In this document: positions 4,981 through 39,664 of the stretch, piece by piece
Layout of the letters: the number at the start of each line of letters is the position of its first letter
How positions within the stretch are numbered: position 1 is the stretch's first letter
Source: Penicillus capitatus
Taxonomy: Eukaryota > Plantae > Chlorophyta
NCBI GenBank assembly: GCA_965649825.1
Contig: OZ287710.1
Location: 248,001 to 312,000, forward strand
Length of the DNA: 64,000 nt
Direction of reading: 5' to 3'
Notes under the pieces: model-generated
Told to the model about the DNA's origin: nothing
What the model saw: only the letters and a program-made list of their open reading frames with translations
Database searches by the model: none
Made by a program: the position numbers and the translations under genes

Positions 4981-7413
<2,433 letters not shown>

Positions 7414-7553
7414 TTTCGCGTTCGCTGACGCTGAGTCGCCGTCAAAAGCAGAGTTACAAAACAAAGAACTTCGGCTACGAATGTCCGCGGCTGCGTCGCG
7501 AACAGAGTCATGATGAGAAATTCGTACGTCACATCACGTCATCGTTTCGCTGG

Positions 7554-9150
7554 TCACCCTCGAAGCATGGTGACCACGCTTTCGAGCGCAAGCTTGAGAC
7601 TGAATTCGTACGAGGCTGCTAGATTCATGACGCTCTCCTGACCGTCTGGCAAGAAGGAGACCGTTTCTGCAGACAATCGCAAAGTTGACGACGTCAATCG
7701 CACGGATCACGATACCGCTGGGTGTCATGCGCTTCTTGCTGACGATCGGCATCGACGGCGTCAGTGTCTGAGAAGGGATACGAATGATGTCTTGAGCAAA
7801 CAGCATGTCTGCAGCGGGATGTGCCGTGAAGGCGATCACAGGCGTTCCCAGTCGTTTGGCTTCTAATGCCAGTGCACTGATCTGCGAAAAGAGTGAGACC
7901 GCGACAGGTGTGATGCAGAGCATGCGAAAAATCGATACCGTGCTGTAGAAACTGGGTCCTGCGGAGACGAGGAAGACGTCGTCCTCTGCGATCTGTGGCA
8001 TCGACACATCCGTCAGACAGAATGCATCCATGCCCAGTTCATTGAGACTGTGCGCAAAGGCTTGCAATGCGAGGCCTTCGACGCCGACGCCATGACAGAT
8101 GACACAGCGTGCATTGCGCAGCGTTCGGCACAACGACTGCATCTCCCGGCTGTCGATGCCTGTCATCACCGACGAAATCTCGGCAACGACAGAATCCACA
8201 ATCTCGCCAAAATGCTGCATCTCCTGTCGAGAAAGAGTGAGAAAAAGAGTGAGTTCAACAGAAAGCGACTTCTTCCAATCGCCCTTCTCTCGGTCGTTTG
8301 TCAATCGGCGGGTTTTTATCTGGAGGATGTTTGGTGCGTGTGCTTCCCCCCTGCAGCAGAGTCCTGTATGAGGAACACAACCCGCAGGTCTGTGTGCATC
8401 GACTTTGTTGATGCCCCCTGTCTTCGTTGAGCGATTTCTCAGCCATGCAGAAAGCTGATCGCTGGTAACATCTCCGTTGTGTTGTAAAGCAGTCAAGAGT
8501 TTTCGACGAGGGATCGGATTGCCTGAACACCATGCACGCATCGTTCCACGCGATCGACGGCGGAAGGAGAAGGCACTTGAGTTCAGGTAGTCATCGAGGA
8601 CGCGTAATTGGTCATTGTTTGGCTTCCATTTCGTTCTCTTTGGAGTCCCCCTTCTGCTTCTCGATAGCTCCGGCAAGACATCCACCATTTCATCGTCTTC
8701 AGGCAAAACCCACTTGGGTGTTTTTAACTGCTCCAGTGTCGAGGATGATCGTTCCGGCAAAATCTCGTCAATCAGTGCATTCACGTCTCTTGCTATTTTA
8801 TTCGACTGTCCATCGGAGATCCCATCTTAACAGATCGAATGCAGATTGGGAGGATGGCTTACAGGTATATCCACGGGATCCGTTGGTCCGATATTTTTGA
8901 CAAGGCCGTGGCAAAAGGTCGTTTCTTGATGAAGCTTTTCTTCTGGTGATGGGCTTTGTTGTATCGCCGAGACCTTTGACAATGCTCCCGGAAGATGCTC
9001 TGTTGGTATTTGGGCCAATGGATGGACGGTAGGATTCCTTCCCGTTCTGTTCACGTTCCTATGAAAATCATCCAGGTACAGCAATTCCTGCATGCCGCCC
9101 TCCACAACGTTATCAAAACCGATCATGTCTGACAAATGCGTTTGTATCAT
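7554..9150 (-). CDS. Homeodomain-like (WOX-like) plus SIS (HxlB/plant SIS-type) fusion protein, about 7 introns
   Basis: KRTKWKPNNDQLRVLDDYLNS|SNPIPRRKLLTALQHNGDVTSDQLSAWLRNRSTK, followed in the spliced frame by CHGVGVEGL, DDVFLVSAGPSFYST, VIAFTAHP, VMNLAASYEFSL. Confidence 0.7.
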
Positions 9151-10007
9151 CTACACGACCGACCACACACAAAGGAGATCAGCCACCTCCACTTTTGCCA
9201 ACCGTGCGTACTTCGGAATAGAGCTGCTGGGCACTTGGCCCGTTGGTGTCCGTAAGGACGTTACTATTCGGTAAGTCACGGTCTGACGGAGTTCCGCCAC
9301 AGTGTTGCATACTGGCGCGATATCAGAAAGAATGAAATGTCATAAGGCGCAGCAACAAACGCGCGAATGCTCTTGTTCGATACTCAGCCACTAGACAACG
9401 CCAAACTCCATAAGGGCGTCGGGATGGGGAGAATATGCCGGATGCGTTGACCCAACTAAAATCGGCCACCGTCGTTAGGTTCGGTAAACGGCGGCACTAG
9501 GTCAGGACGCCGAACAGTTTTTCCCTTGGTTGAACCGTTCGCATCTTGAGCATTGCCGTGGCCGTCACCGCGGAGAGAGCAACGGAAGAGTGGCGATAAA
9601 CGCCATCGAGACAGGGCATCAAAACGTTCGCGTTCGCTGCGAGGCCTACCTGAAGCAACGCGTGTGATCCACGACTTGGCTTGAGAGGAAAACGTGTTGG
9701 AAACACAAAATTCCGCGCGGAAACAGATAGCGACCATTGTGTTGGTCATGGATACCATCACCGCAACCGTCGAGCCATGGAAGCCGATAGCCGCCATATA
9801 CTCCATCTTTCCTTTCACCGATACATCGACAGTGCTCGCGGTCGTGCCGTATTTGCCAATCTATGCCTGGCCGCCGCCAACTCGACATGCGGTGCAACAT
9901 CAGCGACAAGGACTGAGGACCATTGTTTACGAAAGGACGTTTCATTAGGGGACACGTCGATCGATCCGTCTCGATTTTCGCTCGTTCGATTCTCTTGTTG
10001 CGCAGAC

Positions 10008-37207: not shown

Positions 37208-39664
37208 ATGGTCCGGTTCGCTCTGCGCAGTGTTCGACAAGGATGCCTGCACTGTGCATCCATCTCAATCGACGTTCCTTTCGCATTTTTGCGCCTTTAT
37301 TCCTCGACGGAAAGATTACATGGTCGTCGCGGTGTTGTTGGGCGCGTTGCGGCACCTCGTCCTTTGTCTGCCGTACGCGTGAAAGACGAAAAGCCCTTGT
37401 ACACGGACGATGCATGGTCTGCGATTGTCCGGAACGGAAGAGTGGATACCAAAGGTGTCGAAGATTACCTTGCTAAGCTCTCAGACACACAGAGACATGC
37501 AGCAACGGTGTCTGCGAAGGTGATCCGGGTGATCGCGGGTCCAGGAAGTGGTAAGACGCGTGTGTTGATTTCCCGAGTGGCCACGCTGCTGTCGCAGTAT
37601 ACGTCTCCAGATCGCCTTCTCTTGCTGACCTTCACCAACAAAGCGGCCAATGAGATGCGCGATCGACTGGAGACGCTTTTTCCCAGAGGTGCTTTGCTCG
37701 ACAAAATCTGGTCCGGTACATTTCACTCAACGGCGGCGAAGATGTTGCGGCGTGAGATGGAGCGATTGAAGGATGGGAGAACATCGACTTTTCGCATCAT
37801 CGACGAAGATGAATCGTACGAGATCATCGCACGGATCGTCGCAAAGATGGAGGACCACGAATCCATCATCCTGCCATCCGATTCTCGTGCGATGCAAAAA
37901 GAAAAGAGAGAAGCCAATGCCCAGTTAAGAAAAGAAATCCGGGAGAAGACGAAAGACCTCGCGAAACGCATCGCACGGGTCAAAGAGTCGTTGGTGACGA
38001 CACATCGGCTGACTGGGAGAGAAGCCGGAAGGCAGTTCGTGCTGCAGGCTGATATGCAGGAGCCGCAGAGGCATTGGTACGAGAATGACAGTTTTGTCCG
38101 ATGCTTTGATCAATATCATGCGTATCTCCGAGAACAGAACCTGGCGGATTTTGGCGATCTAACCAGCTGTATGAATTACCTGCTGAGACATGACAATGTC
38201 GTGCGGCAGAAATACAGAGGAAGATTTGAGCACATCTTGGTCGATGAGATGCAGGACACCAATCTCCCTCAGTACGAGTTTCTTCGTCTGCTGCTCGGGA
38301 GCTGTCGAGAGATGGAGAAGGGCAGAAGTTCGCTGTTCGTTGTGGGTGACCCGAATCAGTCCATCTACAGTTTTCGAGGAGCGCAAACTGCGAATCTGAA
38401 CAAATCTCTCGAGCAAGACTATGCAAAACTCATGACGACGATTCTCCTTGTCGAAAACTACCGATCCGTAGCAGACATCGTCCAGACATTGGGCAGAGTG
38501 GTGAAAAGACTTCTCCCAAGTGCATTGTACCGTGAGATGATCATTCAGAGAAAAGATGAAAATGAGAGAAGAGTGTGTGTGAGAATGTTGCGAAGCGATC
38601 GCGAAGAAGCGGCCTTTGTCAGTGACGCCATCAAAGACTTGACAGAAAACAAGGGCTACAGCTTCGATCAGATCGCTATCCTCTACAGAGTCCACAAGCT
38701 CAGTTTTCGTTATGAGAGCGAACTGCAGAGGCAGCAGATTCCGTTCTCTGTAAAGGGTCAGTCCTTCTGGGATAAGGCAGTCGTGAGAGACTGTGTTGCT
38801 TATCTGCGTTTTGTCATCAATCCAGGCGATTTCAATGCTTTTGAACGTATCTACAATGTTCCGTCTCGTGGTATTGGCGAGACGACGCATAATAATATCC
38901 AAGTCTTCTGTGAGACGGAGGGTCATAAGTTTCCTCAGTACTTAGTGGAGGATGTGATGGATGCTGATACGACAGCTCTGTCCGTTGAAGAGGTGAAGAT
39001 TCCACAGCTGGAGTTGCCAAAGAGCGCAAAGGTGACCAAAAAGGCACAGGACGGAATTCAGGCACTGCGCCAGATATTTGTTTTCTTGCGTTCTGCTGCC
39101 AGAAGAGGCCGACCTGACGCTGTACTCGAAACGTTGTTGACAGACGGCGGCTATCGTGATTACGTTTCGAGAAATTCCAATAGCTCCACAGACGACAAGA
39201 AAATCGCCAAGAAGCTGAGTGCACTGGAGGAGTTGAAAGAAGCCCTTCAGTCTATGCAGAGATTGGACAGTTCGACCCATGCCATCGGTCTCGATGCCCT
39301 GACGAAGTTAATCCAGGATGCATCTCTGATGCGAGATGTCGGAGACGAGAACGAAGACGACGGCGTGCAGCTCATGACCATCCATGCAGCAAAGGGACTG
39401 GAATTCAAGGCCGTATTCTTGGTCGGATGTGAGGAAGGCATCTTCCCTCTGCCGGATGAAACGAACAATCAAGAAGATGAAGAGCGATTGATGTTTGTCG
39501 CTGTCTCGAGGGCACAGGATTTCTTATATATCACCCACGCACGAGAAAGGTTCTCTTCTTATCTGGGCCGAGCTGCTATGCGGTATCCGTCTCGTTTTCT
39601 GGAATCCGTTTGTGGAAGCAATGGCCACAGCGTGAGCCCTTTCACACGAAGCCAGGCATTCTAG
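37208..39664 (+). CDS. UvrD/PcrA/Rep SF1A DNA helicase, intronless, with transit-peptide-like N-terminus
   Basis: AGPGSGKT, LTFTNKAA, GTFHS, LVDEMQD, VGDPNQSIYSFRGA, NYRS, LMTIHAAKGLEF, LMFVAVSRA. Confidence 0.95.
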   Translation: MVRFALRSVRQGCLHCASISIDVPFAFLRLYSSTERLHGRRGVVGRVAAPRPLSAVRVKDEKPLYTDDAWSAIVRNGRVDTKGVEDYLAKLSDTQRHAATVSAKVIRVIAGPGSGKTRVLISRVATLLSQYTSPDRLLLLTFTNKAANEMRDRLETLFPRGALLDKIWSGTFHSTAAKMLRREMERLKDGRTSTFRIIDEDESYEIIARIVAKMEDHESIILPSDSRAMQKEKREANAQLRKEIREKTKDLAKRIARVKESLVTTHRLTGREAGRQFVLQADMQEPQRHWYENDSFVRCFDQYHAYLREQNLADFGDLTSCMNYLLRHDNVVRQKYRGRFEHILVDEMQDTNLPQYEFLRLLLGSCREMEKGRSSLFVVGDPNQSIYSFRGAQTANLNKSLEQDYAKLMTTILLVENYRSVADIVQTLGRVVKRLLPSALYREMIIQRKDENERRVCVRMLRSDREEAAFVSDAIKDLTENKGYSFDQIAILYRVHKLSFRYESELQRQQIPFSVKGQSFWDKAVVRDCVAYLRFVINPGDFNAFERIYNVPSRGIGETTHNNIQVFCETEGHKFPQYLVEDVMDADTTALSVEEVKIPQLELPKSAKVTKKAQDGIQALRQIFVFLRSAARRGRPDAVLETLLTDGGYRDYVSRNSNSSTDDKKIAKKLSALEELKEALQSMQRLDSSTHAIGLDALTKLIQDASLMRDVGDENEDDGVQLMTIHAAKGLEFKAVFLVGCEEGIFPLPDETNNQEDEERLMFVAVSRAQDFLYITHARERFSSYLGRAAMRYPSRFLESVCGSNGHSVSPFTRSQAF

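What the first reader, a model, noticed from the sequence alone, without database searches (positions are those of the whole stretch)
7554..9150. WOX-like homeodomain fused to a SIS sugar-phosphate domain: a possible eukaryotic analogue of RpiR regulators
Seen: after removing a 54-nt intron (8523-8576) the protein reads KRTKWKPNNDQLRVLDDYLNSSNPIPRRKLLTALQHNGDVTSDQLSAWLRNRSTK. This has the WOX-type RWxP..QL start, LxxxGxI/V, and helix-3 W48/N51/R52/K55 (R53 is Ser). Canonical introns (62 and 46 nt) keep the frame into a SIS domain; the raw ORF 7534-8784 also crosses both domains without a stop. Established: bacterial RpiR/HexR/MurR regulators combine an HTH with a SIS domain to sense sugar phosphates, and plant stand-alone SIS proteins carry GVGREG and SAGPGGFST. 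Here these are GVGVEG and SAGPSFYST, so the conserved Arg is lost, which suits a binding rather than catalytic role. Inference: a metabolite-responsive transcription factor built independently from eukaryotic parts. I know of no such architecture but could not search databases.
Basis: partly seen in the sequence, partly recalled or inferred. Interest (0 to 1): 0.8.

Follow-up and report, generated by a model that had tools for sequence, protein, structure and literature searches.

The report
Green-algal homeodomain–sugar-isomerase-domain fusion protein
The window holds a real seven-exon gene of a siphonous green alga that joins a WOX-like homeodomain to a sugar-phosphate-isomerase-type (SIS) domain; it belongs to a conserved but undescribed green-algal family, and this copy has lost two of the SIS domain's most conserved motifs.

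Summary
On the minus strand, 9150-7554, lies a seven-exon gene for a 426-aa protein.

The same model is intact in two related assemblies, and the same exon order is seen in a more distant one. Intron lengths differ by non-multiples of three, exons carry no indels, and substitutions pile up at third codon positions.

The fusion is not unique to this genome. At least 16 database proteins cover both domains in one chain. They come from Ostreobium (at least two paralogues), Caulerpa (two), Myrmecia, Trebouxia, a transcriptome-project (MMETSP) transcript cluster and uninterrupted ~3-kb contigs.

The homeodomain's nearest solved relatives are WUSCHEL and STENOFOLIA. It lacks the WOX loop insertions and the WUS box.

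The window copy is degenerate. It has lost the family's near-invariant Arg (GVGVEG) and the C-terminal HxNLE motif.

I found no paper describing this architecture. Sugar-phosphate sensing is plausible by analogy with RpiR regulators, but it is untested.

The parts
8863..9150 (-). Exon 1: start codon ATG at 9150 and the variable N-terminal region (MIQTHL...)
   Evidence: ORF 8827-9150. The MIQxHL start is conserved in L001 and L009. No Pfam hit.
8806..8862 (-). Intron 1, 57 nt, GTAAGC...ACAG
   Evidence: L001 has a 2-nt deletion here, and the GT-AG ends are kept.
8577..8805 (-). Exon 2: the rest of the N-terminal region, then the homeodomain N-terminal arm and helix 1 (PKRTKWKPNNDQLRVLDDYLNS)
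   Evidence: Helix at residues 21-32 of the AF2 model.
8523..8576 (-).
   Evidence: It is 62 nt in L001 (8-nt insertion) and 22% diverged. The Caulerpa model g5967 carries a 20-aa insert at this exact spot, and the ~3-kb contig ORFs lack it.
8404..8522 (-). Exon 3: homeodomain helices 2 and 3 (...KLLTALQHNGDVTSDQLSAWLRNRSTKTGGINK)
   Evidence: W48 and N51 are present.
8351..8403 (-). Intron 3, 53 nt, GTCGAT...TGCAG
   Evidence: It is 52 nt in L002 (1-nt deletion). That breaks the raw ORF but not the spliced one.
8270..8350 (-). Exon 4: linker, read in a different frame from the raw ORF (GGSTRTKHPPDKNPPIDKRPREGRLEE)
   Evidence: It encodes the family-conserved KRxRE + acidic motif, for example Ostreobium KRPREEG. 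The unspliced frame lacks this motif.
8224..8269 (-). Intron 4, 46 nt, with a pyrimidine-rich 3' end. It contains an in-frame TGA (8258-8256) if retained
   Evidence: GT-AG ends and length are conserved in L001 and L002.
7939..8223 (-). Exon 5: first half of the SIS domain, including GVGVEG (8091-8074) and SAGPSFYST (7965-7939)
   Evidence: PDB YckF E=7e-8. TIGR03127 E=2.5e-18. AF2 pLDDT above 90.
7882..7938 (-). Intron 5, 57 nt (not 62)
   Evidence: Splicing gives ...SFYST|ISALALEA, colinear with the family's ...SYYSTVSALALEA without a gap. Relatives' raw ORFs P0017, P0018 and P0020 stop following the family sequence right after SAGPSF(Y/L)..., consistent with reading into an intron here.
7716..7881 (-). 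Exon 6: second half of the SIS domain (ISALALEAKRLGTPVIAFTAHPAADMLFAQDIIRIPSQTLTPSMPIVSKKRMTPS)
7667..7715 (-). Intron 6, 49 nt
   Evidence: 43% diverged from L001, against 4% in the flanking exons.
7554..7666 (-). Exon 7: last SIS helix (ETVSFLPDGQESVMNLAASYEFSLKLALESVVTMLRG) and stop codon TGA 7556-7554. The family's C-terminal ~17 residues with RHTNLE are absent
   Evidence: Aligns with Caulerpa and the family. L009 also ends shortly after MLR.

Best explanation
A single nuclear gene of an unnamed bryopsidalean (siphonous) green alga encodes a 426-aa protein. In order, the protein has a poorly conserved N-terminal region, a canonical-length homeodomain whose nearest relatives are WOX homeodomains, a disordered linker carrying a conserved KRxRE basic patch (NLS-like), and a PHI/HxlB-type SIS domain. 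It is a divergent member of a homeodomain-SIS family conserved in core chlorophytes.

Most likely mode of action (inferred): a transcription factor in which the SIS domain is the oligomerisation module. PHI enzymes and RpiR-type SIS domains are dimers or tetramers. Such a module would present two to four homeodomains to repeated DNA sites. In canonical family members the SIS domain may also bind a sugar phosphate that tunes DNA binding, as in RpiR, MurR and NanR regulators.

The window copy has lost the near-invariant Arg of GxGR and the C-terminal HxNLE. It has therefore probably lost isomerase chemistry, and perhaps the ancestral way of binding ligand. Its SIS domain is nevertheless still under purifying selection.

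Sub-probabilities:
- Single fused gene and family membership: about 0.93.
- DNA-binding regulator: about 0.65.
- Ligand-responsive in this copy: about 0.3.
For: Gene model:
- The 7-exon CDS of 1281 nt is intact in the window, L001 and L002, with GT-AG kept at every intron. Intron lengths differ by 1, 2 and 8 nt, and exons have no indels.
- Codon-position differences are 20/16/62. The SIS domain has 20 synonymous against 5 non-synonymous codon changes.
- Exon 4, read in the spliced frame, encodes the family linker motif KRPRE.

Fusion seen elsewhere:
- One HMMER stretch spans both domains in P0006-8, P0011, P0012, P0015 and P0027. P0003, P0013 and P0163-P0168 carry both domains by their sequences and alignment.
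- Sources include Ostreobium CAD7695506.1, Caulerpa g5967 and g474, Myrmecia KAK9809893.1, Trebouxia KAL0052458.1 and an MMETSP transcript.
- ORFs of 530-550 aa lie uninterrupted on ~3.2-kb contigs from several SRA runs.
- The syntenic locus L009 has the same exon order.

Homeodomain:
- AF2 predicts three helices with pLDDT 76-95.
- The Foldseek top four hits are WUS and STENOFOLIA homeodomains, probability 0.99, rmsd 2.4 A.
- The family profile hits STENOFOLIA at 1.8e-6 and WUS at 2.4e-6.

SIS domain:
- YckF, AF1796, MJ1247 and the HPS-PHI fusion are the best hits by sequence and by fold. TIGR03127 gives E=2.5e-18.
- RpiR-family regulators come next by fold.

Degeneracy of this copy:
- 157 of the 158 stand-alone-size homologues that carry the GxGxxG motif have Arg there, and 154 of 180 end in HxNLE. 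The window has GVGVEG and stops before that motif.
Against: - There is no transcript from this species, and no experimental data exist for any family member.
- The window homeodomain alone is below Pfam's cut-off (16 bits against 22.9). It has K5, R50, S53 and K55 where the family has R5, K50, L53 and R55.
- The L009 orthologue has lost Asn51 and Arg5 and is 3 aa shorter. The window/L001 homeodomain shows 5 synonymous against 5 non-synonymous changes. DNA binding in this sub-lineage may therefore be relaxed.
- Losing the Arg and HxNLE argues against ancestral-type ligand binding in this copy.
- The oligomeric state and the nuclear location are assumed, not shown.
- The Foldseek E-values for the small homeodomain are weak (0.2).
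Confidence: 0.6

Rival explanations
1. Two adjacent genes, a small homeodomain gene and a stand-alone PHI-like SIS gene starting at ATG 8220 (MQHFGEIV...), have been joined by eye. The open frame between them is chance in a very compact genome.
For: - Genes here are only about 200 nt apart: the stop at 7554 is followed by the phototropin ATG at 7356.
- The Met of MQHFGEIV lines up with the N-terminus of bacterial PHI.
- About 66 open codons arise by chance roughly 4% of the time (own estimate).
- If intron 4 were retained, the homeodomain protein would end at TGA 8258-8256.
Against: - The homeodomain frame has no stop before the SIS domain unless intron 3 is spliced and intron 4 is retained. 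That stop would lie about 35 nt from the supposed SIS start.
- Exon 4 encodes a family-conserved motif and joins both neighbours in frame in three genomes, despite intron indels.
- Both domains lie in one ORF on ~3-kb contigs, in an MMETSP transcript, and in independent gene models from four named species.
Confidence: 0.04
2. The SIS domain is an active sugar-phosphate isomerase. The protein would then be a moonlighting or nuclear-tethered enzyme rather than a ligand-controlled regulator.
For: Canonical family members keep GVGREG, MGxSFE and the C-terminal RHTNLE, as do bacterial PHI-like proteins.
Against: - The window copy lacks the Arg and the HxNLE tail.
- The whole green-lineage clade replaces the bacterial SGSGET loop with SAGPxxxST.
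- Scores are far below the HxlB equivalog cut-off (66.6 against 160 bits).
Confidence: 0.1
3. In this sub-lineage the homeodomain no longer reads DNA sequence. The protein has drifted to another role, for example a partner or dominant-negative of the canonical paralogue through SIS-SIS contacts.
For: - The homeodomain evolves faster than the SIS domain: 5 synonymous/5 non-synonymous against 20/5.
- L009 lost Asn51 and Arg5.
- The window copy departs from the family consensus at positions 5, 50, 53 and 55.
- Caulerpa and Ostreobium carry several paralogues.
Against: - The window and L001 keep W48, N51, R52 and a basic N-terminal arm.
- The three-helix fold is predicted with high confidence.
- The gene has no frameshifts or stops in four genomes.
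Confidence: 0.15

Closest known systems
Bacterial RpiR/MurR/HexR/NanR regulators (HTH_6 + SIS)
   Same: They share the order: an N-terminal helical DNA-binding domain, a linker, then a C-terminal SIS domain. The SIS domain is similar by sequence (NF008590, E=2e-6) and by fold. Full-length NanR and RccR align over about 290 columns.
   Different: The DNA-binding domain here is a eukaryotic homeodomain, not HTH_6. The SIS domain is of the PHI/HxlB subtype and is closer to enzymes than to RpiR sensors. The gene is eukaryotic and split by introns. Ligand response is untested.
6-phospho-3-hexuloisomerase (PHI/HxlB; YckF 1m3s, MJ1247 1jeo) and the green-lineage stand-alone PHI-like SIS proteins
   Same: These are the best sequence and fold matches. 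Canonical family members share GxGRxG, MGxxFE and the C-terminal HxNLE.
   Different: The window protein is fused to a homeodomain. It lacks the Arg and HxNLE, has SAGPSFYST where bacterial PHI has SGSGETKS, and scores far below the equivalog cut-off.
WOX-class homeodomains (WUSCHEL 6ry3, STENOFOLIA 6wig)
   Same: They are the nearest solved homeodomains by profile and by fold. They share R5-W6-x-P8, Q12, a Gly before helix 3, W48, N51 and R55 in the family consensus.
   Different: The family homeodomain has the canonical 60-residue length, without the WOX loop insertions. It has K50/R50 where WOX has Q50. No member has a WUS box.
Plant HD-ZIP III/IV proteins (homeodomain + START, some with MEKHLA)
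   Same: This is the eukaryotic precedent for a homeodomain fused to a small-molecule-binding domain (own knowledge; Mukherjee et al. 2009, PMC2775110).
   Different: No leucine zipper or START domain is detected here. The partner domain is a sugar-phosphate-type SIS fold, not a lipid-binding fold.

Membership tests
Homeodomain (PF00046) | Three-helix homeodomain fold | tested here: met
   AF2 predicts helices at 21-32, 39-48 and 54-69 with pLDDT 76-95. Nearly all Foldseek hits with probability above 0.2 are homeodomains.
Homeodomain (PF00046) | Signature residues W48 and N51, and a basic N-terminal arm | tested here: met
   The sequence reads ...SAWLRNRSTK, with KRTKW in the arm. Position 53 is Ser in the window and Leu in the family.
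Homeodomain (PF00046) | Score above Pfam's gathering cut-off (22.9 bits) | tested here: not met
   The window homeodomain scores 16-16.5 bits, E about 0.01. All 10 family homeodomains match at E<=0.1, best 9.9e-7.
WOX class | [quoted passage not shown] 2009) | tested here: not met
   The W6-to-W48 spacing is canonical. In the profile alignment, STENOFOLIA and WUS carry 4-5 extra residues relative to this family.
WOX class | WUS box (TLxLFP) downstream of the homeodomain | tested here: not met
   A regex found none in the window protein or in 14 family members.
WOX class | WOX homeodomains are the nearest relatives | tested here: met
   In the PDB profile search STENOFOLIA scores 1.8e-6 and WUS 2.4e-6, ahead of bicoid at 5e-5. 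The Foldseek top four are WUS and STENOFOLIA. The margin is modest, and no phylogeny was made.
SIS domain / PHI (TIGR03127 HxlB) | SIS alpha/beta fold closest to PHI enzymes | tested here: met
   Foldseek gives YckF at 7e-13, then AF1796, the HPS-PHI fusion and MJ1247. phmmer gives YckF at 7e-8.
SIS domain / PHI (TIGR03127 HxlB) | Equivalog score cut-off (160 bits) | tested here: not met
   The window scores 66.6 bits and Caulerpa 90.5 bits.
SIS domain / PHI (TIGR03127 HxlB) | GxGR(E/S)G loop with its near-invariant Arg | tested here: not met
   The window has GVGVEG. Of 158 homologues that carry the motif, 157 have Arg.
SIS domain / PHI (TIGR03127 HxlB) | C-terminal HxNLE | tested here: not met
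   The protein ends ...VVTMLRG*. The motif is present in 154 of 180 homologues and in YckF. A similar downstream string in another frame is broken by a 2-nt indel in L001.
SIS domain / PHI (TIGR03127 HxlB) | Isomerase activity on hexulose-6-P / fructose-6-P | not testable with these tools
   This needs an enzyme assay.
RpiR/MurR family | N-terminal HTH_6 domain | tested here: not met
   Pfam finds only Homeodomain and HTH_NDX signals.
RpiR/MurR family | C-terminal SIS domain that binds a phosphosugar effector | tested here: inconclusive
   The SIS similarity is real. Effector binding cannot be tested here.
Chlorophyte homeodomain-SIS family (unnamed) | Colinear homeodomain, KRxRE linker and PHI-like SIS in one chain | tested here: met
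   BLASTP against Caulerpa g5967 gives 4e-54 over residues 153-425. Single HMMER stretches cover 147/152-425 in P0006-8. The linker motif is present.
HD-ZIP III/IV (homeodomain + START) | Leucine zipper and START domain | tested here: not met
   No such Pfam hits on the protein.

The most novel reading that the evidence does not exclude
Core chlorophyte algae possess a eukaryotic 'one-component' regulator. A sugar phosphate, for example a Calvin-cycle or pentose-phosphate intermediate, would bind the PHI-derived SIS domain and switch the oligomeric state or DNA binding of a WOX-related homeodomain, coupling carbon status directly to transcription. The window copy would be a ligand-blind or dominant-negative paralogue.
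Probability: 0.3. Interest if true: 0.8.

Novelty: new variant of a known kind. Interest (0 to 1): 0.62.

Why it matters
Direct metabolite sensing by a DNA-binding protein is routine in bacteria and rare in eukaryotes. Here a homeodomain is joined to an enzyme-derived sugar-phosphate fold, and the fusion is conserved across Bryopsidales and Trebouxiophyceae. The proteins exist in databases, but I found no paper that describes them.

If the SIS domain senses a phosphosugar, this would be a convergent eukaryotic counterpart of RpiR regulators. It would also be a new link between photosynthetic carbon flux and gene control in green algae.

The finding also bears on the early history of WOX-like homeodomains in chlorophytes. 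Finally, it exposes gene-model errors in public annotations: a retained intron in Caulerpa g5967 and a truncated Ostreobium model.

Tried and rejected
- Pfam on the raw ORF gave only a weak HTH_NDX hit. The domains emerge only after splicing and with family profiles.
The only 62-nt GT-AG candidate (7938-7877) shifts the SIS frame. Homology supports 57 nt instead, and the partner of the 46-nt intron is 53 nt.
- A possible eighth exon encoding ...ADIRSRSSLF, which resembles ...MRSRHTNLE, downstream of the stop. I rejected it because it lies in another frame with no usable splice, is broken by a 2-nt indel in L001, and L009 also ends early.
- The two-gene model (see rivals).
- Literature. Searches combining SIS domain, sugar isomerase or hexuloisomerase with homeobox, homeodomain, Chlorophyta or Caulerpa found nothing relevant. 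The Caulerpa genome paper and the Mukherjee 2009 classification do not mention the architecture. No paper in the library gave PHI active-site residues, so I argue from conservation only.
- The SRA runs behind the ~3-kb contigs could not be tied to a species or a library type, and the contigs carry no poly(A) tail. Their transcript nature is inferred from the absence of introns.
It was rerun with alignment A4.
Full report
**Observation.** The raw minus-strand ORF 7534-8784 (416 aa) exists and runs through both regions. GVGVEG (8091-8074) and SAGPSFYST (7965-7939) are present.

**Gene model.** I aligned the locus with two related metagenome contigs: L002 (nearly identical) and L001 (about 90% DNA identity). 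This yields a seven-exon model on the minus strand.
- Exons: 9150-8863, 8805-8577, 8522-8404, 8350-8270, 8223-7939, 7881-7716 and 7666-7554. The stop codon TGA is at 7556-7554.
- Introns: 57, 54, 53, 46, 57 and 49 nt.
- In all three genomes the CDS is 1281 nt, every intron keeps GT-AG, and no exon has an indel. Three introns differ in length by 2, 8 and 1 nt.
- Window/L001 differences fall 20/16/62 on codon positions 1/2/3. The SIS part has 20 synonymous against 5 non-synonymous changed codons.
The 46-nt intron (8269-8224) is real, but its frame-restoring partner is 53 nt (8403-8351). The SIS intron is 57 nt, not 62.
- Exon 4 is read in a different frame from the raw ORF. There it encodes IDKRPREGRLEEE, which matches a linker motif conserved across the family, for example KRPREEG in Ostreobium and KRERE/QEDD in Caulerpa-like sequences. 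This validates introns 3 and 4. Only with both removed do the homeodomain, the linker and the SIS domain share one frame. The 1-nt deletion inside intron 3 in L002 breaks the raw ORF but not the spliced one.

**Domains.**
- SIS domain. It is of the 6-phospho-3-hexuloisomerase type. The PDB hits are YckF (7e-8), AF1796, the HPS-PHI fusion and MJ1247. NCBIfam TIGR03127 RuMP_HxlB gives 2.5e-18, far below its equivalog cut-off, followed by a MurR/RpiR model at 2e-6.
- Whole-protein model. An AlphaFold2 model of residues 140-426, built with 15 family sequences, has mean pLDDT 82.9. It shows three helices in the homeodomain, a disordered linker and a confident alpha/beta SIS fold. Foldseek returns YckF, AF1796, HPS-PHI and MJ1247 first, at 1e-12 to 1e-10. 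Full-length RpiR-family regulators NanR and RccR and the MurR SIS domain come next.
- Homeodomain. The window sequence alone is weak in Pfam (16 bits). All ten family homeodomains match Pfam Homeodomain (best 1e-6). A family profile finds STENOFOLIA (1.8e-6) and WUSCHEL (2.4e-6) ahead of bicoid and other homeodomains. A homeodomain-only model (pLDDT 74) has WUS and STENOFOLIA as its four best structural matches, with probability 0.99 and rmsd 2.4 A. The E-values are weak (0.2) because the domain is small.

**Not a WOX by definition.** Mukherjee et al. 2009 define WOX by extra residues in both loops. Here the W6-to-W48 spacing is canonical, and WUS and STENOFOLIA show 4-5 extra residues against the family profile. 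No member has a WUS box. Position 50 is Lys in the family and Arg in the window, where WOX has Gln. 'WOX-like' is fair as a nearest neighbour. 'WOX member' is not supported.

**The fusion is a conserved family.**
- An exhaustive HMMER search found 633 homologues. Most are bacterial PHI-like proteins. Seven representatives cover the homeodomain and the SIS domain in one matched stretch (P0006-8, P0011, P0012, P0015, P0027), and two further long proteins (P0013, P0021) also carry homeodomain sequence. A profile search added six more fused proteins (P0163-P0168).
- Named sources are Ostreobium quekettii (CAD7695506.1 and at least one more paralogue), Caulerpa lentillifera (g5967 and g474), [Myrmecia] bisecta (KAK9809893.1) and Trebouxia sp. 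C0006 (KAL0052458.1). There is also an MMETSP transcript cluster whose fuller relatives, P0167 and P0168, carry the complete homeodomain.
- Several 530-580-aa members sit as uninterrupted ORFs on ~3-kb contigs from separate SRA runs. They lack the 20-aa insert that the Caulerpa genome model shows at the window's homeodomain intron position. This is best explained if they are transcripts. The library type could not be confirmed.
- A more distant relative, L009, keeps the synteny EMP70 - homeodomain-SIS - phototropin and the same exon order.
- Together these points reject the two-gene reading.

**Organism.** The neighbouring phototropin is 71-72% identical to those of Codium fragile, Bryopsis and Ostreobium. 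Closer matches are unnamed. The window therefore comes from an unnamed bryopsidalean green alga with a compact genome and introns of about 50 nt.

**How this copy differs from its family.**
- The family consensus is RWKPxxxQLxLLEQHFxSGYTKPTPELxAAVQxAGxATExQVSVWLKNRLAR ... CCYGVGREGLVMK ... LVSAGPSYYST ... MGxSFE ... RHTNLE at the C-terminus.
- The window protein instead has KWKP, WLRNRSTK, GVGVEG and LAASYE, and it stops about 17 residues early, without RHTNLE.
- Among 180 stand-alone-size homologues, Arg follows GxG in 157 of the 158 with the motif, and 154 end in HxNLE, as YckF does.
- Fragments from the window's closest relatives have N, P or N at the Arg site (P0017, P0018, P0020). L009 also ends soon after MLR. 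The Caulerpa g474-like group (P0011, P0170) has Lys at the Arg site and no RHTNLE.
- The loss is therefore specific to a sub-lineage, not a property of the architecture.
- In L009 the homeodomain itself has lost Arg5 and Asn51 and is three residues shorter. The window/L001 homeodomain shows relatively more amino-acid change than the SIS domain.

**Mechanism.**
- Shown: one gene, a homeodomain fold, a PHI-type SIS fold, family conservation and purifying selection.
- Inferred: a nuclear DNA-binding regulator in which the SIS domain supplies oligomerisation. PHI enzymes and RpiR SIS domains are dimers or tetramers, and WUS binds repeated sites as a dimer (both from my own knowledge). In canonical members the SIS domain may also sense a phosphosugar, as in RpiR-type regulators.
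- The window copy probably lacks isomerase chemistry, and perhaps ancestral ligand binding. It may act without ligand or together with a canonical paralogue.
- Rivals: two genes (about 0.04), an active moonlighting isomerase (about 0.1), and a homeodomain that no longer reads DNA (about 0.15).

**Novelty.** The proteins are in UniProt and NCBI as 'Homeobox domain-containing protein' or 'hypothetical protein'. Seven literature searches and two key papers gave no description of a homeodomain-SIS architecture. HD-ZIP III/IV (homeodomain + START) is the eukaryotic precedent for a homeodomain fused to a ligand-binding fold. RpiR is the bacterial precedent for a DNA-binding domain fused to SIS. I rate this a new variant of a known kind. 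It is real and conserved, but its function is untested.

Noticed in passing
window 5441-7356 (-): A phototropin gene (LOV-LOV-kinase) starts only 197 nt downstream of the homeodomain-SIS stop codon. A ~55-nt intron appears to split the LOV1 NCRFLQG motif. The EMP70 - homeodomain-SIS - phototropin order is conserved in L001, L002 and L009.
   Followed up: partly
L009:3480-3760 (and L010): The orthologous homeodomain in a more distant relative reads ...KPAWKPNNDQLRILDRYLNSQSLPKILKELQRAGSVTHCQLSAWFKRRHRRQP. Arg5 is Ala, the near-universal Asn51 is Arg, and the domain is three residues shorter. This suggests relaxed or altered DNA binding in this sub-lineage.
   Followed up: partly
P0003 (Caulerpa lentillifera g5967.t1), residues ~286-305: The public gene model carries a 20-aa insert (IVIFQTLSPNRPPECLCFLG) exactly where the window has its homeodomain intron. 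It is probably a retained in-frame intron, which hides the homeodomain from domain scans.
   Followed up: partly
P0169 / P0397 (Ostreobium quekettii): NCBI lists a 226-aa 'SIS domain-containing protein' (CAD7697233.1). EukProt holds a 529-aa model, probably of the same locus since it sits in the same 90%-identity cluster. The short entry is probably a truncated homeodomain-SIS paralogue. P0010 and P0016 look like similar fragments that begin just before the KRxRE linker.
   Followed up: no
window 8224-8269 (-): If the 46-nt intron were retained after intron 3 is spliced, the protein would end at TGA 8258-8256. That would be a homeodomain-only isoform, about 35 nt before an ATG (8220) that could start a SIS-only product. 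This is possible alternative-isoform logic and is untested.
   Followed up: no
window 37208-39664 (+): An intron-free 818-aa ORF has full UvrD/REP helicase domains (Pfam 1e-67). That is unusual among the intron-bearing neighbours, so it may be an organelle-targeted gene or one of bacterial origin.
   Followed up: no
window 9151-9400 and 7357-7553: The flanks of the gene are about as conserved with L001 (9-11% divergence) as its N-terminal exons (12%). Introns 2 and 6 are far more diverged (22% and 43%). The short intergenic regions may therefore be under constraint.
   Followed up: no
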